Notes under the pieces: model-generated | What the model was told of the DNA's origin: nothing | The model's database searches: none | What the model saw: only the letters and a program-made list of their open reading frames with translations | Made by a program: the position numbers and the translations under genes | NCBI RefSeq assembly: GCF_023055435.1 | Contig: NW_025964001.1 | Coordinates: 42,780,001 to 42,844,000, forward strand | Length of the DNA stretch: 64,000 bases | Direction of reading: 5' to 3' | Source: Haliotis rufescens | Taxonomy: Eukaryota | Shown: positions 372 through 11,612 of the stretch, in pieces | Numbering within the stretch: position 1 is the stretch's first letter | Layout: each line of letters opens with the position of its first letter

Positions 372-1086
372 AATACAAGATGACAGCAGTGACAAGAGGA
401 ATTTGTCTTGGCATAAACAACAGTTTAAAAAAGGATACCCTTCACGATCAGGCACAGAAGTCGATGTTGAGAAATTAAGAGAACTGTTCACTAAACTCCA
501 GTTTACTGTGGATGTAAGATTAAATCTTGCTTCAAAGGAGATGAAGATAACATTAACGAGAAGTGCCAAAGAAGACCACAGCAAGTATGATGCATTTTTT
601 TATTTAACAAATGGCACAGTAAATGGTGTACGAGGAACACATGGCGTCGCTGTAAGCATGGACGATCTTACATCTCCCGTTGAAGCATCAAAGTGTACAA
701 CTTTATGGGGTAAACCCAAACTCGTCTTCATTCAAGCATCCAGAGGGGAACTTGTAATGAATAATAAAGTAACAGAAAGCCAGACTGTTGCTGATCACGC
801 AGACTTTCTCATGGGATATAGCACTGTGCAGAGTTATACTGGTGCCAGGAACAACAGAGACGTCAGTTACTTCATCAAGAGTCTGACTCGTATCCTGGAC
901 ATGTATGGTAACCAACGCGACCTTTTGAGCTGTCTGTCAATGATAAACAGAGAAGTGTCACTGTTTAAAATGGCTCCAAATGGGCTCCATCATAACCAGG
1001 TGCCTGCTCCGATTTTCACTCTCACAATGAAGGTTCACTTGACCAGCGATCCTCAGTGTCTCTATCCTTGGCTACATTTGCCGTAG
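372..1086 (+). pseudogene. Terminal (caspase-domain) exon of a caspase-like paralog; frameshifted and catalytically dead
   Basis: Acceptor TTTCAG|AATACAAGATG matches the last exon of the 6434-9392 gene. MTAVTRGICLGINN is in one frame and FKKGYPSRSGTEVD...KPKLVFIQASRG...QVPAP in another: about 4 nt are missing near 420 relative to the paralog, plus an in-frame 6-nt loss (AFFYLTNG vs AFVCFILTNG). Upstream exons would lie outside the window. Confidence 0.8.
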
Positions 1087-5392: not shown

Positions 5393-6433
5393 GTGAGTAT
5401 TAATCGCTGATCGCCATGTTCCTAACTCGGAAGTACACGCCCAGCACTTGCAGTGAGGACGTTGTGTACCATGAAACAGAACAACAGCATAACGCATGCA
5501 CGCATGTCTCACTTAATTCATATTAATACACTCTGTAGACGAATGTATGCATTCATTCTCCACTTGCAGAAACTGGGCCGGACAGGGTAGTTGGTGTTCT
5601 ACTTAGCTGTGATGACAAAGGGAAATTCGAACTGAAAGGTTGATCTGGTATGATCTGGTATGAGAAAATAAATATGTCCGTATGCATATATGTAGTAAAA
5701 CACAATCCCATCCCTTATGTATTGTTCTCAGCCCTATATCCGTGTCCATTTCTATAAACCCTTACCTCACATCTATATATATACTATGCCTATCGAATTC
5801 GCCTAGTTTACACACGGGTGTGTTAATCTCGGCTTGTCAGTTGGGCTAAGGTCAAGACAGCTGGCATAATAACACTGAGTATTTCTACACTTCATGTCGC
5901 CGACATAATATGCCAGCCTTAAACCTATCGGGCGTTATAATCTTTACATTACGATCGATATGATTCAAGCAAATGTTGGTATTTGACCTGTTATATAACC
6001 GTTAACTCACGTTATGTTATCGACTTATATATAAATCATCCTCGGGCATTTGTCTCTTGTAGTAATGAGATTGTTGGGCATTTTCCACTTGTTTATAACT
6101 GACTAGTTCTTAAACCTGATTTCATCAATTATAAATCAATTTAATGGTTATAGAGCATCCGCGGTGTCAGGTTTGGTTGCTTCTCCTAATCTACTGGTTA
6201 GATAAAGCACTGTTGGCAGCAAGTATAACAGAAATATGAAACGCCAACGCAAGAACAACCAGTCTCAATGCCATCGTGCGTGATAGGCAAAATACCGGTT
6301 AAAATTATATGAATGTTGAAACTAGATGTTCGCGAAAAGGGTAAGCACGTCCTGCCCTGCACGTGTTCTATGTTAGCCTGTGACTAGATATATTGATGTC
6401 TATCCTCACATCTATTAATAGATAGGTATCAAG

Positions 6434-9392
6434 ATGACCACGGAGAAGAGACGCTTGCCTTATGCAAAGGAGTTTGTCCGGAGTCTGGTGGAGACGACCG
6501 ATGACGAGGAGCGAGTGGCTGAGGTCGAACAGTTCCTGCTGGAGACGATGTCACAGACACTGGCGGAGGTGGAGACGCGGTTCAGAACGTACATGCAGAA
6601 GCTACATCAAGTGACAGGCGAGCAGAATTCCCAGACGATGCGTAGTACGATAACCCGGATGGAAAAACAGATCAACTCGAGATTCCACACAAAAGACTCC
6701 TTCGGTTTGTTTTTTTACATCAAATACTGGTAATGAATAGATGATAATTCAGCTGATATCTTAACCTCCACTAACTCATAGACATGTGTTTTTTGTCAAG
6801 GTCCTGGTATCTAAAAAAGAGTCTTTAAAAGATGTGGAGACATGGTGCAGAGGTTAACATGAAGGATTTCAGAAGTTGATTTTTTCTACTTTTTCGTGTG
6901 CAGCCTTTCTTATGTGTCAATACTAGTAGTCATTAAACTGAGACAATGTGACAAATGATTTAAATACCGCATTACTAATAAATAACTTATTACTTTGGTT
7001 TTGGGTTGTTTTTTTTGCATTTAACAGAAAAGAGGTCAAAGGTTAGTCATATACACAGAGAGGCTCTGAGGAACTGCTACACTTTGCTCACAAGTGACCT
7101 TGAACTCTTCAAATCCAGCATCATTGATGACCTTCTAGCATCGGATGTGATGTCCGTGTCAGACAAGGACAGTATCAGAGGTAAAGACTCGAGGAGAGGT
7201 CAGAACGAGGAATTCTTCAGCTACATCGTGGGGCGTCTGTCTTTTGAGGACTTCCACCGCCTCCTGCTGCCTGCCCTGAGGAAGGATCATCGTCACGTGG
7301 CGGAGGCGCTGATCTCGGAACTGGACAGACTGGAGGAGGAGCATGAGGAGGAGCAGTGCGTGGCCTGTAGAGCCAGGAGATATGTGCAGGTGAGGAAGGA
7401 GTTTCGTATAAAAGGAATTGACTGTTTCAATATTCAGGTTTCCAACAAGAAAATCGTTTATGCCATCTGCAATGAAGATATCGCCATACTTCCTTATCTT
7501 TTACTTTTAGAATCCCCATTCGCTGCACTATTCTCAACATCTAGCACATACTACTGGACCCTCGTGAACTAAGTGACCATCAGCTCAAATAATTATGATG
7601 AACATTTTGAACAGATTCTGTAATATTATTGAACGGCTGATACATAAAATATAGTATATAGTGGAATTTGTTTTTCGTGATTATTAAAAGTATTACATTT
7701 ATCAAAATATGACTACACCTATAGCCCCTAAAGAATTTTTGTTTTCACATTGACAGCTCAAAAGGGTGGCAACTCCTTTGCTACAACAAAAGATTATAGA
7801 AATTCCTCTGTTTGGCGATCTCAAGAGTTCTGGAATGTCCAACAATACCAAATGGACAGAGCTTAGGAAAGAGGTGTCCGACAAAGACATCATTGCTGCC
7901 ATGGCTAAAAAGTATCCTGATCTACACAAGGAATTTAAGCAACTGGAGTGTGACACTCTGAACTGTTCTTGTCCCACTCGCGACGTTCAGGACACTGGTG
8001 TTCCAGAAACACCAGAGAGAGTCTTCACTGCACAGGAAAGTGTCAGTGAATATGAGAGCTGCTTGACAGATTCTTTTGAGATCGAAGAAATTGAAAATAT
8101 AATGGGTGATCTGTCGTTCCAAACAGATAAGTTTGAGGAAGGTAAATTGTCGTTCAGTTGCGTATAATACATCAATACATGAACATTACAGTTTTGGAAT
8201 GTTTATTATTTATAAGCTGCCGGGAAAAAGAATGTATACACCCATATTTGATGGTGGCTAAAAATGAAACAAACAAGGAATGGTTATTCGACGGTGATGT
8301 ATTTGATGCGGGTATGAGAGTTGTGTTTTAGGCCTTTCAGCCCAGTAACGTTTTGATCACGGTTATATTTTTTTGGTCAAATCCAAATTTTAAGTGTACA
8401 CTTTTTTGACCCGGCAGTTTAGTTTACACATGTGACAGCTCTGGACTGATGCTGAAATCACCATTAATCAGTGACTCTGTTTTATGTCCAACTGTGCAAA
8501 TGCTTGCGTCCGATAACATTCAACAGGCTGTCTGGGTTTCTTACATTAAACAGGCAATTATTTTACACAGAGTTTCCGAAGGATCAATGTTTGAAGCCTT
8601 GTTGCAACATTTCTGGGTTTTTTTGTTTCAGAATACAAGATGACAGCTGTTCCTAGAGGCATCTGTGTCATCATCAACAATAAACGCTTCAAGAAAGGCT
8701 TCCCGACAAGAAGAGGGGGAGTGGACATTGACGAAGAACATTTGAGTGAATTGTTCACTAAACTCCAGTTCACCATAAATTTGCAAACAGATTTAACGTC
8801 AGTCGATATGATGAACAAACTAAAGAGCTATGCCGAACAAGATCACAGCGAGTACGACGCGTTTGTTTGTTTTATTCTCACAAATGGTACCGAATACGGT
8901 GTCGCTGGAAGCGATGGTAAACTAGTAAAAGTGCAAGATCTTACGTCAATGTTCCACGCATCAAAGTGTCCAACGTTAGCAGGCAAACCCAAAATGTTCT
9001 TCATCCAAGCATCAAGAGGAGGCAATTTCATGAGTGAATTGGTTCAGGATGACAAGTCGGATATTTCAACTGCTGACGAAGCCGACATTTTCATTGGGCA
9101 CAGCACCGTTCAGGGATACAACAGTGCCAGAAATACAAAATATGGCAGTTATTTCGTCAGTGCTTTGGTCAGAACGTTAGACAACCACGGTGATCAGCAG
9201 GACCTCTTGAGTTGCCTGGCGATGGTCAACAAGGATATATCAAGGATACGAATGGGTCACAAATGGGAAACATATAAACAGGTGCCCGCCCCACAGTTTA
9301 CTCTGACAAAGAAGGTGTACCTGACAAGTGATCCGCAGTGGCCTTATCCCAGTCTGGCGTCCACGGACACTTTAGGGGAGGAGAATCCATGA
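6434..9392 (+). CDS. CARD-containing caspase-like protein, catalytically inactive (pseudo-caspase), 592 aa; exons 6434-6704, 7028-7389, 7757-8141, 8632-9392
   Basis: GT-AG junctions with compatible phases (1,0,1) join into a 1779-nt ORF. Exon 2 is CARD-like (HREALRNCYTLLTSDL...IIDDLLASDVMSVSDKDSI...). The last exon has the caspase p20/p10 fold (RGICVIINN, YDAFVCFILTNG, CPTLAGKPKMFFIQASRG, ADIFIGHST, GSYFV, QVP). Confidence 0.88.
8213..8421. mobile_element. Tc1/mariner-type MITE in the last caspase intron
   Basis: Inverted ends CTGCCGGGAAAAAGAATGTATACAC / GTGTACACTTTTTTGACCCGGCAG with TA-like flanks; homologous to 60204-60893. Confidence 0.6.
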
Positions 9393-9415
9393 TTTTGGGG
9401 GGGATTAGAGGGAGT

Positions 9416-9688
9416 TGGATGGTTGGTTGGTTGGTTGTTTTACGCCGCAGTCAGCAATATCCCAGCTATACGACTGCGGTCTGTAAATAATAGAGTCTGG
9501 ACCAGACAATCCAGTGATTGATATCATGAGCATCGATCCACTCAATTGGGATCGCTGACATGCTTCAACCAAGTCAGCGAGCCTAACCACCCGATCCCTT
9601 AAGTCGCCTCTTACGACAAGCTTAGTCGCCTTTTTACGGCAAGCATGGGTTGCTGAAGACCTATTCTTACCCGGATCTTTCACGGGTC
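9416..9688 (-). mobile_element. SINE family C (GACCCGTGAAGATCCGGG head) in the caspase 3' UTR
   Basis: 11-bp TSD TTAGAGGGAGT at 9405-9415 and 9689-9699; (CAAC)n tail; several other copies in the window. Confidence 0.85.
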
Positions 9689-9799
9689 TTAGAGGGAGTA
9701 CAGACTTTGCTGGTATGGGACAATGAAAGACCTTGAGATGATAAGTAAAATCCCAGATCCCAGGTCTTTAAGAGAATCACAACTCACGGGGAATTACTG

Positions 9800-10470
9800 G
9801 AATCACAGATCCTTATATTATTGTGAGAGTCGCAGATCCTGGTGCTTTTATGAGAGTCGCAGATCCTGCTGTTATTATGATAGTCACAGATGTTGATGTT
9901 ATTATCAGAGTCGCAGAACCTGCTGTTATTATCAGAGTCACAGACCCTGTAGTTATTATGAGAGTCGCAGATCCTGATGTTATTATGACAGACACAGATC
10001 ATGTTATTATCAGAGTCGCAGAACTTGTTATTATGATAGTCACAGACCCTGATGTTAATATGATAGACAGAGATCATGATGTTATTATCAGAGTCGCAGA
10101 TCCTGGTGCTATTATGAGAGTCACAGACCCTGATGTTATTATGATAGACACAGATCCTGATGTTATTATCAGAGTCGCAGAACTTGTTATTATGATAGTC
10201 ACAGACCCTAATGTTATTATGATAGTCGCAGACCCTGGTGTTATTAGGAGAGTCGCAGATCCTGACGTTATTATGATAGTCGCAGATCCTGGTGTTATTA
10301 TCAGATTCACGGACCCTGATGTTATTAGGAGAGTCGCAGATCCTGACGTTATTATGATAGTCGCAGATCCTGGTGTTATTATCAGATTCACGGACCCTGA
10401 TGTTATTACGATCCTGGTGGTATGGTCACAGATCCTGGTGGTATGGTCACAGATCCTGGTGGTATGGTAT
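9800..10470. repeat. Minisatellite with 21-27-bp units (CAGATCCTGATGTTATTATGATAGTCG)
   Basis: Tandem units are visible and generate the repetitive ORFs 9823-10551 and 10074-10484. Confidence 0.9.
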
Positions 10471-10889
10471 TGGGAGAATGACACTACCGTACCGGGTGGT
10501 TATAAGGAGTATATTAAGATCGCCAGAGAAGAATATATGTGCGCTGTGTAAATATTCATATATCAAATGACAAGATTGAAAAAGTAAATAAATGAAACAT
10601 ATGCCCAGTTTGCGACTGACTGTCATCATCAACATTACTCAGGTGCTTGAATACTGTCACCTCAATCACATATCCGTGTCATACCCACATTGTGTTCAAC
10701 ATTAACGACTTTCTCAAGCACAGGATTGAATACACTCATGACTAATTGATACCAACCAACTGAGCAGCACGATTGTAGGACAAACACGTTTATATGTCCT
10801 GCTAATAAATATATTTTTATTACTGCTGCCTATGAATATTGTTTTTAAGCATTGTTGAGAGAAACGGTTGCATAAAAGCGTACAAGTTT

Positions 10890-11612
10890 TCCTGCGGGGC
10901 ACTTGCCACGGTTGTATAAAGGCCTCCATGTATGTCTGCGGGCGCCCTGTCACGTTGCTATAAAGACCTACATGTTTATCTGCGGGGCACCCTGTTACGG
11001 TTGTTTAAAGGCCTACATGTATGTCTGCGAGGCACCCTGTTACGGTTGTATAAAGGCCGACATGTATGTCTGCGGGGCACCCTGTCGCGTTGCTATAAAG
11101 ACCTACATGTTTGTCTGCGGGGCACCCTGTTACGGTTGTATAAAGGCCTACATGTATATCTGCGAGGCACCCTGTTACGGTTGTTTAAAGGCCGACATGT
11201 ATGTCTGCGGGGCACCCTGTCGCGTTGCTATAAAGACCTACATGTTTATCTGCGGGGCACCCTGTTACGGTTGTATAAAGGCCTACATGTATATCTGCGA
11301 GGCACCCTGTTACGGTTGTTTAAAGGCCTACATGTATGTCTGCGAGGCACCCTGATACGGTTGTATAAAGGCCTACATGTATGTCTGCGGGGCACCCTGT
11401 TACGGTTGTATAAAGGCCTCCATGTATGTCTGCGGGCGCCCTGTCACGTTGCTATAAAGGCCTACATGTATATCTGCGGGGCACCCTGTTACGGTTGTAT
11501 AAAGGCCTACATGTATATCTGCGAGGCACCCTGTTACGGTTGTATAAAGGCCTACATGTATGATTGCGGGGCACCCTGTCACGTTGGTATAAAGGTCTAC
11601 ATGTATATCTGC
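10890..11612. repeat. 45-bp minisatellite (GGCACCCTGTTACGGTTGTATAAAGGCCTACATGTATGTCTGCGG)
   Basis: About 16 tandem units; 15-aa periodicity in the overlapping ORFs. Confidence 0.92.

What the first reader, a model, noticed from the sequence alone, without database searches (positions are those of the whole stretch)
6434..9392. Intact CARD-bearing pseudo-caspase: both catalytic residues replaced, substrate pocket apparently kept
Seen: a clean 592-aa, four-exon ORF whose caspase domain has ILTNG where active caspases have (L/M)SHG and QASRG where they have QACxG. The residues forming the Asp-binding S1 pocket look retained: Arg in RRGGVDID, Gln in FIQAS, Arg in SARN. Established: that His/Cys dyad is essential, and the known dead-caspase regulator c-FLIP uses DED prodomains. 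Inference: this is an independently evolved CARD-type FLIP analogue. It could be recruited to an apoptosome- or inflammasome-like CARD platform and act as a dominant-negative partner, an allosteric activator or a substrate trap. The small His>Asn and Cys>Ser swaps suggest the fold is maintained by selection.
Basis: partly seen in the sequence, partly recalled or inferred. Interest (0 to 1): 0.78.

Follow-up and report, generated by a model that had tools for sequence, protein, structure and literature searches.

The report
Abalone CARD-bearing dead caspase gene
This is a real, expressed red abalone gene for a caspase look-alike that has lost both catalytic residues, one of a small abalone family of such dead caspases; similar dead CARD-caspases have already been described in mussels, so it is interesting but not a new kind of thing.

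Summary
Window 6434-9392 (+) is a four-exon gene of 592 codons. Its exon translations sit exactly in the RefSeq protein 'caspase-8-like [Haliotis rufescens]'. Spliced transcript contigs cross all three introns in 4 runs from 4 studies.

Exon 4 is a full Peptidase_C14 domain (E 1.8e-51). It has Asn for the catalytic His, Ser for the Cys, and the Arg/Gln/Arg S1 triad kept. Exon 2 is a divergent CARD: below Pfam's cut-off here, above it in paralogs.

The H. rubra caspase-domain model and an intact 584-aa H. asinina ortholog keep Asn/Ser. The gene lies in a tandem cluster with a Gln/Pro paralog and a decayed Asn/Ser copy. It belongs to a 16-row clade in which no member has the Cys. Every caspase domain found next to this prodomain type in the genome is Cys-less (8 of 8).

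Old paralogs show pN well below pS. Recent variants show constraint in exons 1-3 but not demonstrably in exon 4.

A FLIP-like, non-catalytic regulator is plausible but untested. Dyad-mutated CARD caspases are already reported in Mytilus coruscus. Verdict: new member of a known kind, moderate interest.

The parts
6385..6433 (+). 5' untranslated part of exon 1 (minimum extent)
   Evidence: The transcript contig of run X11 starts at 6385; those of X1, X2 and X9 start at 6422 (table 8).
6434..6704 (+). Exon 1 coding part: start codon plus 90 codons and 1 base. Unassigned, probably helical N-terminal region.
   Evidence: ORF. There are only sub-threshold Pfam matches, to unrelated families (best TPR_IMB1, E 0.0011, 18.1 bits against a 29.1-bit cut-off; several coiled-coil families at E 0.02-0.4), and no assignment. 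Homologous exon in paralog A. The junction to exon 2 is seen in contigs of X9 and X11.
7028..7389 (+). Exon 2: divergent CARD (residues 11-91 of its translation), followed by an acidic stretch and a conserved CxxC
   Evidence: Pfam CARD 20.2 bits, below the 23.9 cut-off. Homologs score above it: P0055 27.8 and P0081 24.7; L046 ORF 39.5 and L039 ORF 28.8. Of the 13 PDB hits of the family profile, 11 are CARD chains. Identity to the H. asinina ortholog is 93%.
7757..8141 (+). Exon 3: conserved 'region 2' (about 75 residues ending in CxC), then an acidic, poorly conserved linker
   Evidence: Alignments A2 and A3. There are weak hints that region 2 is a second CARD-like domain.
8632..9392 (+). Exon 4: complete caspase-fold domain without the catalytic dyad, plus the stop codon
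   Evidence: Peptidase_C14 E 1.8e-51. Caspase-3 E 7e-39 and caspase-8 E 1e-36 in the PDB. Contigs of all 4 runs cover it.
8883..8885 (+). AAT, Asn at the catalytic His position
   Evidence: Unchanged in the contigs of X1, X2 and X9.
9012..9014 (+). TCA, Ser at the catalytic Cys position (two base changes away from either Cys codon)
   Evidence: Unchanged in the contigs of X1, X2 and X9.
8712..8714 (+). Arg aligned with caspase-3 Arg64 (S1 pocket). The other two S1 residues are Gln at 9006-9008 and Arg at 9129-9131.
374..1074 (+). Caspase-domain exon of the decayed tandem copy B. It also has Asn/Ser, with one frameshift near 412-421.
   Evidence: Its only other remnant is the 3' half of a CARD exon, about 7.2 kb upstream of the window start, with a 25-base deletion.
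9393..9505 (+). 3' untranslated region, running into a highly repeated element (9406-9700)
   Evidence: Contigs end between 9395 and 9505. Summed depth rises about 10,000-fold from 9406.

Best explanation
The gene encodes a proteolytically dead caspase homolog that is maintained by selection in abalone. It has four parts: an N-terminal, probably helical region; a divergent CARD; a conserved Cys-bracketed region that may be a second CARD-like domain; and a complete caspase fold. The caspase fold lacks both the nucleophile (Cys to Ser) and the general base (His to Asn) but keeps the Asp-binding Arg/Gln/Arg triad.

It belongs to an abalone family of at least seven intact genes with this prodomain type, all without the catalytic Cys. 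The same CARD-plus-region-2 module also occurs in genes without a caspase domain.

Shown: the gene structure, its expression, the loss of the dyad, conservation in three Haliotis species, and family membership.

Inferred: the CARD module brings the protein into homotypic CARD assemblies. There the dead caspase domain acts without cutting, most likely by pairing or competing with active caspases, as c-FLIP-long does for caspase-8 or as proposed for caspase-12.
For: Structure and expression. The exon model is identical to RefSeq P0217. Spliced contigs cross all three introns in X11, introns 1 and 2 plus intron 3 (on two contigs) in X9, and introns 2 and 3 in X1 and X2. That is 4 of 4 runs laid, from 4 studies and 2 organism labels. 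Introns 2 and 3 have no depth outside repeats. No second genomic copy of exon 4 exists that could be a retrocopy: 37 matches in the genome, and the next best is 53% identical.

Loss of catalysis.

Conservation of the catalytic replacements.
- The H. rubra caspase-domain model P0001 (86% identical over exon 4) and the intact 584-aa H. asinina ortholog P0218 keep Asn, Ser and the S1 triad.
- Identity to P0218 by exon is 82, 93, 81 and 83%. Exons 2-4 align without any gap.

Selection.
- Paralogs A and C give dN/dS by exon of 0.43, 0.42, 0.25 and 0.16. In the caspase exon pN is 0.31 against pS 0.73.
- Of 20 listed coding variants in the runs, 11 are synonymous where 21% would be expected (P 9e-4).

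Family.
- A 16-row clade (support 90/88) contains no Cys at all. The local cluster is supported at 99/95.
- Of 17 Cys-less rows, 11 keep the whole S1 triad.
- All 8 caspase domains found beside an exon-2/3-like module are Cys-less. At least 9 such modules have no caspase domain nearby.

CARD.
Against: - Exon 4 shows no detectable recent constraint. Variants are 2 synonymous against 5 non-synonymous (P 0.45; piN/piS about 0.67).
- Exon 4 is more diverged between H. rufescens and H. asinina (83% identity) than an active caspase-3-like gene of the same species pair (90.7%).
- The H. rubra ortholog is annotated as two models because of a one-base frame change in exon 3 (P0205 and P0001). I could not tell whether that is real decay or an assembly error.
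- The neighbouring copy B is a pseudogene.
- dS between A and C is saturated in exon 4, so that ratio is rough.
- No synonymous rate could be measured between orthologs, because no DNA of other species was available.
- No partner, no binding and no activity were tested.
- No active caspase with the same prodomain was found, unlike the c-FLIP/caspase-8 pair.
Confidence: 0.55

Rival explanations
1. Asp-motif binder or decoy. The dead domain uses its intact S1 pocket to hold Asp-containing peptides without cutting them. These could be caspase substrates, cleavage products, or pathogen-made pseudosubstrate inhibitors. It would then act as a trap, sensor or sink rather than as a dimer partner of caspases.
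For: The Arg/Gln/Arg triad is kept in C, its two orthologs and 8 further Cys-less relatives: 11 of 17 Cys-less rows. This holds although the nucleophile was lost before these genes diverged. The caspase domain evolves faster than the CARD exon, as an interface in conflict might.
Against: Positions that shape the S2 and S4 subsites in caspase-3 are replaced, and two of the three differ among the three orthologs. Paralog A and four other relatives lost the triad. Faster evolution is equally explained by relaxed constraint. No test for positive selection was possible.
Confidence: 0.15
2. CARD scaffold only. The conserved, selected part is the prodomain (CARD plus region 2), which works as an adaptor in a CARD signalling assembly. 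The caspase-like domain would be a slowly decaying passenger.
For: Recent variants show strong constraint in exons 1-3 (9 synonymous of 13, P 3e-4) but not in exon 4. The CARD exon is the most conserved part (93%). The same module exists in genes without a caspase domain.
Against: Exon 4 has stayed open and gap-free over 245 aligned residues between H. rufescens and H. asinina. It shows pN 0.31 against pS 0.73 between old paralogs. Seven intact genes keep a full-length caspase fold.
Confidence: 0.15
3. A transcribed gene on its way to becoming a pseudogene, with no function of its own.
For: Copy B next door is decayed. The H. rubra ortholog carries a frame change in exon 3 in the public models. 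Exon 4 has 5 non-synonymous against 2 synonymous recent variants.
Against: The reading frame of 592 codons is intact, with four canonical exons. It is spliced in 4 of 4 runs. A full-length ortholog is intact in H. asinina. There is an excess of synonymous variants overall (P 9e-4). pN is well below pS against paralog A.
Confidence: 0.1
4. Residual or altered catalysis: Ser at the Cys position acts as a nucleophile, making an unusual serine protease.
For: Ser sits exactly at the nucleophile position, and Gly of the oxyanion hole and the S1 triad are kept.
Against: The general base His is replaced by Asn in all three orthologs. Relatives carry Pro, Ala, Asp or Gly at the same position, so the side chain there is not conserved. 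That Cys-to-Ser caspase mutants are used as inactive controls is my recollection, not a result of a call.
Confidence: 0.03

Closest known systems
c-FLIP long form (CFLAR), the vertebrate pseudo-caspase
   Same: It is a death-fold prodomain joined to a full caspase fold without catalytic residues, and the gene sits beside related caspase genes. It is known as a non-catalytic partner that tunes an initiator caspase (PMC11121540, section 9, passages read).
   Different: c-FLIP has two DEDs. Here Pfam finds CARD and no DED at E up to 1. In the tree this gene lies in a mollusc clade, while the echinoderm and hemichordate DED pseudo-caspases pair with active caspases, the acorn-worm one with its own species', so the origin is independent. 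No active sibling with the same prodomain was found.
Caspase-12, discussed as a CARD-bearing pseudo-caspase
   Same: It has a CARD prodomain plus a caspase domain thought to be non-functional, and is proposed to modulate other caspases (PMC11121540, section 9.2, passages read).
   Different: Per that paper, caspase-12 is classified as an inflammatory caspase. In rodents the change lies in an S1 arginine; in humans it lies in the SHG box. Here both dyad residues are replaced and the S1 triad is kept. The best PDB matches are caspase-3, -7 and -8, with no caspase-1 among the 60 shown.
Mytilus coruscus CARD-group caspases with a mutated dyad
   Same: A mollusc has 12 CARD-containing caspases grouped as caspase-2/9. 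Nine have the human-type dyad, and three have His replaced by Gly and Cys by Thr. The authors state that such mutations are ubiquitous in bivalve caspases (PMC10967218, passages in sections 5, 6, 8 and the discussion).
   Different: It is a bivalve, not a gastropod, and has other residues (Gly/Thr). That paper reports no conservation analysis or function for them in the passages I read.
Aedes aegypti CASPS18 decoy caspase
   Same: It is a lineage-specific caspase paralog without catalytic residues, considered a decoy that enhances a paralogous caspase. I read this only as cited in PMC4840389 (passage and reference to Bryant et al. 2010).
   Different: As far as I recall it is an insect effector-type caspase without a long prodomain. 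I did not read the original paper.
Haliotis diversicolor 'caspase-8' (AYK02334.1) and H. rufescens LOC124143787 and LOC124110963
   Same: They have the same architecture and the same clade: N-terminal region, CARD, region 2, acidic linker, Cys-less caspase domain.
   Different: They keep the His and have Ala or Asp at the Cys position. They are only 39-56% identical to exon 2 here. They are named as caspases in the databases, with no note of the missing Cys. My search for the accession in papers found nothing.

Membership tests
Caspase fold (Pfam Peptidase_C14) | Full-length match to the family profile above the curated cut-off | tested here: met
   175.5 bits against a 21.4 cut-off, profile positions 1-233 of 233. 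Caspase-3 in the PDB at E 7e-39.
Active caspase (cysteine protease) | Catalytic His and Cys dyad | tested here: not met
   Asn (AAT) and Ser (TCA) sit at the aligned positions. The same is true in the H. rubra and H. asinina orthologs.
Active caspase (cysteine protease) | S1 pocket Arg, Gln, Arg that binds the substrate Asp | tested here: met
   All three align with caspase-3 Arg64, Gln161 and Arg207.
Active caspase (cysteine protease) | Measurable cleavage after Asp | not testable with these tools
   Needs recombinant protein and substrate assays.
CARD (Pfam PF00619) | Match above the curated cut-off, or a CARD fold | tested here: inconclusive
   Exon 2 itself scores 20.2 bits, below 23.9, and its single-sequence PDB search finds no CARD. 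Homologous prodomains pass: 27.8, 24.7, 39.5 and 28.8 bits. The family profile hits CARD8 (E 0.024) and Apaf-1 CARD (E 0.12) over the whole domain; 11 of 13 hits are CARDs.
c-FLIP / CFLAR | Tandem death effector domains | tested here: not met
   No DED match at E up to 1 in the exons or in the 3 family members P0199, P0055 and P0081. DED was found in the DED-bearing proteins of the same scan, P0066, P0084 and P0092.
c-FLIP / CFLAR | Common descent with vertebrate CFLAR | tested here: not met
   The gene lies in a Cys-less clade that holds no row from a named non-Haliotis species (three of its rows come from unnamed sources). The deuterostome DED pseudo-caspases group with active caspases, the acorn-worm one with its own species' (100/91 and 100/98). 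No vertebrate CFLAR sequence was in the tree.
c-FLIP / CFLAR | Heterodimer with an initiator caspase that changes its activity | not testable with these tools
   Needs binding and activity assays.
Inflammatory-caspase pseudo-caspase (caspase-12 type) | Membership of the caspase-1/4/5/12 group | tested here: not met
   The 60 best PDB sequences shown are caspase-3, -7 and -8 only. The tree places it with caspase-8-like sequences, with weak support at that depth (52/78).
Mollusc dyad-mutated CARD caspases (as in Mytilus coruscus) | CARD prodomain plus a caspase domain with both dyad residues replaced, in a mollusc | tested here: met
   for this gene. The description of the mussel genes is in PMC10967218 (passages). 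Orthology to them was not tested.

The most novel reading that the evidence does not exclude
Abalone have built a signalling set around one CARD-plus-CARD-like module. It is carried both by caspase-less adaptor proteins and by a family of at least seven Cys-less caspase domains, most of which keep the Asp-binding pocket. In this reading the dead domains are not failed enzymes. They are non-cleaving readers or decoys of Asp motifs, for instance sinks for pathogen caspase inhibitors or sensors of cleavage products. They evolve fast at that surface while the recruitment module stays fixed.
Probability: 0.1. Interest if true: 0.7.

Novelty: new member of a known kind. Interest (0 to 1): 0.38.

Why it matters
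Pseudo-enzymes that regulate cell death are few and well studied only in vertebrates (c-FLIP) and a few insects. Molluscs have greatly expanded caspase families whose odd members are listed in papers but not explained.

This locus offers a clean case. The dead CARD-caspase is expressed, intact in species across the genus, and part of a family in which every caspase domain lacks the nucleophile. Most members keep the Asp pocket, and they share their recruitment module with caspase-less genes.

That gives testable partners, and a reason to ask whether such proteins tune apoptosis or immunity in a farmed animal that suffers from Vibrio and herpesvirus disease. It does not open a new category.

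Tried and rejected
- Single-sequence PDB search with exon 2 found no CARD: 3 hits at E 0.12 or worse, none a death-fold protein. I therefore used family profiles.
- Word-based protein search with the first 300 residues of the H. diversicolor relative found only itself and one H. rufescens protein. The spread of this prodomain outside Haliotis therefore remains unknown. Three relatives come from unnamed ENA or Logan sources.
- A first profile comparison of region 2 with the CARD, using 4 and 5 sequences, gave nothing (probability 0.4%). A deeper one gave 1.6% in global mode and 51% in a permissive local mode. I report this as a lead only.
- Rfam found nothing in 5500-11000.
- I considered that the Asn/Ser could be an assembly error or a private allele. 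I rejected this because of the orthologs and the transcript contigs.
- I considered a processed retrocopy as the source of the spliced contigs. I rejected this because the genome holds no second copy.
- I considered that a shared Asn in copies B and C proves one ancient His-to-Asn change. The tree does not resolve this (supports 88/39 and 94/76), and His to Asn is a single base change.
- dN/dS between orthologs could not be computed.
- Expression level, tissue and induction cannot be read from contigs.
- Papers: six searches found no paper on abalone CARD pseudo-caspases. The library lacks most subscription journals, and supplements (for example Table S1 of PMC10967218) were closed, so this is not proof of absence.
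Full report
WHAT IS THERE

The stretch 6434-9392 on the + strand holds four open exon frames with GT-AG borders: 6434-6704, 7028-7389, 7757-8141 and 8632-9392. The phases are 1, 0 and 1. That makes 592 codons plus a stop (sequence, frames). My first scripted check used borders that were off by one, so I fixed the model by arithmetic.

The model is confirmed from outside. A protein search with a Haliotis rubra relative returned 'caspase-8-like [Haliotis rufescens]', 592 aa. It lies on a contig of 67,865,795 bases, which is the length of the window's own contig. Each of my four exon translations is contained in that protein exactly, at positions 1, 92, 212 and 341. The window is therefore red abalone, as earlier notes of this scan said.

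IS IT EXPRESSED?

I laid contigs of four runs, from four studies and two organism labels, on 6000-9900.
- One contig of run X11 lies on 6385-6703, 7027-7386, 7754-8139 and 8630-9439, so it crosses all three introns.
- X9 shows the first two junctions on one contig and the third on another.
- X1 and X2 show junctions 2 and 3.
- The small offsets from my borders are bases that fit on either side of the junction.
- Introns 2 and 3 have no depth outside two repeated elements. Intron 1 has a weak unspliced contig.

The runs are only guessed to be RNA. Contigs that skip GT-AG introns must still come from spliced RNA, because the genome holds no second copy of exon 4: of 37 matches, the next best is 53% identical.

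All differences in the exon 4 pieces of X1, X2 and X9 are accounted for elsewhere. The Asn and Ser codons are therefore transcribed unchanged. In X11, five of six differences are accounted for.

THE DOMAINS

Exon 4 matches Pfam Peptidase_C14 over the whole profile (E 1.8e-51). In the PDB it matches caspase-3, -7 and -8 (best E 7e-39). In that alignment:
- ILTNG lies on LLSHG and QASRG lies on QACRG. The catalytic His is Asn (AAT, 8883-8885) and the Cys is Ser (TCA, 9012-9014).
- TCA is two base changes from either Cys codon.
- The Gly after the His position and the three S1 residues (aligned with caspase-3 Arg64, Gln161 and Arg207) are kept.
- The positions of Tyr204, Trp206 and Trp214 are Asn, Ala and Tyr.
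- The residue numbers follow the chain numbering. Their roles are textbook knowledge and are also stated in PMC10967218 (passages).

Exon 2 matches Pfam CARD at 20.2 bits, under the 23.9 cut-off. Alone it finds no CARD in the PDB. The assignment rests on relatives:
- The homologous prodomains of four family members pass the cut-off, at 27.8, 24.7, 39.5 and 28.8 bits.
- A family profile hits CARD8 (E 0.024) and the Apaf-1 CARD (E 0.12) over the full domain. Of its 13 hits, 11 are CARDs.
- No DED match appeared at E up to 1.

I call exon 2 a divergent CARD.

Exon 1 has only sub-threshold Pfam matches, to unrelated families including several coiled-coil ones.

THE NEIGHBOURHOOD AND THE FAMILY

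The genome search with exon 4 shows a tandem cluster.
- Gene A lies about 11-16 kb upstream of the window start. It has the same four exons, intact, with Gln and Pro at the dyad positions and two of the three S1 residues lost. Its RefSeq model (876 aa, 'alpha-actinin-4-like') adds upstream exons with a calponin-homology domain.
- Copy B has a caspase exon at window 374-1074 with Asn and Ser but a frameshift near 412-421. Its only other remnant is the 3' half of a CARD exon with a 25-base deletion. It is a relic.
- Gene C is the finding.

Elsewhere in the genome, two more genes have the same architecture: LOC124110963 (His/Asp, same four exons) and LOC124143787 (His/Ala, CARD exon split in two).

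Searching the genome with exons 2 and 3 found 18 and 11 matches. Eight of these modules lie next to a caspase domain. All eight are Cys-less: N/S, Q/P, the relic N/S, H/D, H/A, L/S, G/G and E/G. At least nine others, among them several on one contig, have no caspase-domain hit nearby. These are single open frames of 224-308 residues holding the CARD and region 2. I did not verify that.

In a tree of 40 caspase domains:
- The Cys-less sequences that share this prodomain type, plus three from unnamed sources, form one clade of 16 rows (support 90/88). None of them has the Cys.
- The local cluster of five rows has support 99/95.
- Gene C pairs with its H. rubra ortholog at 100/98.
- The clade sits among caspase-8-like sequences, but that deeper placement is weak (52/78).

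ORTHOLOGS

H. rubra has the caspase domain as a 267-aa model, 86% identical, with Asn, Ser and the S1 triad. Its N-terminal exons are a separate 312-aa model, which leaves the frame after 'TELRK' in exon 3 and reads the +1 frame of my sequence. That could be a real one-base deletion or an error in that assembly. I could not decide which.

H. asinina has an intact full-length ortholog of 584 aa, again with Asn, Ser and the triad. Identity to it is 82, 93, 81 and 83% for exons 1 to 4, with no gap in exons 2-4. An active caspase-3-like gene of the same two species is 90.7% identical.

The replacements are old and shared.

SELECTION

Between paralogs A and C, Nei-Gojobori counts by exon give dN/dS of 0.43, 0.42, 0.25 and 0.16, and 0.30 summed. 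In exon 4, pN is 0.31 and pS is 0.73. dS there is saturated, so the ratio is rough, but non-synonymous sites are far from saturation. All members of the clade lack the Cys. By parsimony, this constraint acted on the dead form.

dS differs nearly ten-fold between the CARD exon (0.31) and exon 4 (2.6). The CARD-exon remnant of relic B is 93-100% identical in DNA to that of C. Both points suggest gene conversion or a later partial duplication of the prodomain exons.

Recent variation points the other way for exon 4. Of the 20 coding differences listed by read laying (12 further differences on the stretch were not shown), 11 are synonymous where 21% is expected (P 9e-4). Exons 1-3 have 9 synonymous of 13 (P 3e-4). 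Exon 4 has 2 of 7 (P 0.45).

The prodomain is clearly constrained today. For the caspase-like domain, only the long-term evidence speaks.

REGION 2

The end of exon 2 and the first 75 residues of exon 3 form a block that is conserved in all 14 family members I aligned. It starts with CxxC and ends with CxC, and has an invariant Trp. The evidence on what it is:
- Its profile has no significant PDB match. The best hit is geminin at E 0.27, followed by three CARD11 CARD chains at 0.32-0.40 aligned over almost the whole domain.
- Pfam CARD hits 2 of 14 members (best E 4.6e-4). In one caspase-less gene the best CARD stretch lies in region 2.
- Profile-against-profile comparison with the family's own CARD gives 1.6% probability in global mode and 51% in a permissive local mode, in register over 75 columns.

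This is a lead for a second, Cys-clasped CARD-like domain, not a finding.

HOW IT MOST LIKELY WORKS

Shown: the protein cannot use the caspase mechanism. It is made as mRNA and it has been kept intact across the genus. Its recruitment module is shared with other dead caspases and with caspase-less proteins.

Inferred: the CARD module takes it into homotypic CARD assemblies. There the dead domain either pairs or competes with active caspases (the c-FLIP or caspase-12 idea), or it binds Asp-containing peptides through the retained S1 pocket.
- The pocket is kept in 11 of 17 Cys-less relatives, which is more than I would expect from a passenger.
- The neighbouring subsites are not kept.
- The inter-subunit stretch holds conserved Asp-rich motifs in all three orthologs. 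The protein could therefore itself be cut by caspases. That is inference only.

The strict FLIP analogy is weakened because no active caspase with the same prodomain was found.

COMPARISON WITH WHAT IS KNOWN

c-FLIP and caspase-12 are treated as the two pseudo-caspases of vertebrates in PMC11121540 (section 9, passages read). A mosquito decoy caspase is cited in PMC4840389 (passage read; original paper not read).

For molluscs:
- PMC10967218 reports 12 CARD-containing caspases in Mytilus coruscus. Three have His replaced by Gly and Cys by Thr. The paper says such dyad changes are ubiquitous in bivalve caspases (passages read).
- PMC7836458 notes odd active-site motifs in oyster caspases (passages read).
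- PMC11463336 places a Haliotis diversicolor sequence near the DED caspases and does not discuss dead enzymes (passages read).

Six paper searches found nothing on this abalone family. The kind is therefore known. This member, its conservation, and the all-dead family sharing one module are new details.

TOOLS THAT WERE CLOSED

These were look-up of encoding contigs, structure prediction and the protein atlas for new sequence. As a result there is no structure model, no fold search, and no DNA of other species.

Noticed in passing
window 7330-7389 and 7757-7984 (end of exon 2, start of exon 3); also L039, L042, L044-L046, L052, L053, L056-L058: A conserved block of about 90 residues follows this CARD type in all 14 genes aligned. 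It is bracketed by CxxC and CxC and has an invariant Trp. Weak, consistent hints (CARD11 in the PDB at E 0.3, Pfam CARD in 2 of 14 members, hhalign 51% in local mode) suggest a second CARD-like domain, perhaps held by zinc.
   Followed up: partly
own genome: contig C512 near 1,027,653-1,100,892; C113:7,517,753; C7:648,284-650,585; C46:5,941,787; C594:28,669,429: At least nine open frames of 224-308 residues carry the same CARD-plus-region-2 module with no caspase domain found nearby. Several lie together on C512.
   Followed up: partly
own genome C223, about 11-16 kb upstream of the window start (L031, L033): Paralog A (Gln/Pro at the dyad, S1 pocket partly lost) is intact. In RefSeq it is joined to upstream exons with a calponin-homology domain and a repeated segment, and named 'alpha-actinin-4-like' (876 aa). 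This is either a real fusion or a merged model.
   Followed up: partly
exon 2 of genes A and C, and the relic about 7.2 kb upstream of the window start: Synonymous divergence between A and C is 0.31 in the CARD exon but 0.9 to 2.6 in the other exons. The relic CARD-exon piece of copy B is 93-100% identical in DNA to that of C, although their caspase exons are old (dS about 1.8). This points to gene conversion or a later partial duplication of the prodomain exon.
   Followed up: partly
window 9406-9700: A highly repeated element lies directly after the stop codon. Summed contig depth rises about 10,000-fold in all four runs, with many internal joints. It is probably a SINE-like repeat in the 3' untranslated region. 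It has no Rfam match. Smaller repeated elements lie at 6262-6392 and 8227-8357.
   Followed up: no
window 9806-10408: A minisatellite of 27-base units with 22.7 copies and 78% matches. It produces long open frames on both strands that are not genes.
   Followed up: no
own genome C68:29,754,056 and 29,767,347; C1:73,986,504; C1:78,437,911: Four further caspase-fold exons lack His, Cys and the S1 residues (E/G twice, G/G, L/S). At least three lie just downstream of the same CARD module. One has an in-frame TGA.
   Followed up: partly
window 8099: The transcript contig of the second organism label (run X11) lacks three bases here. This is an in-frame loss of one codon in the acidic linker of exon 3.
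   Followed up: no
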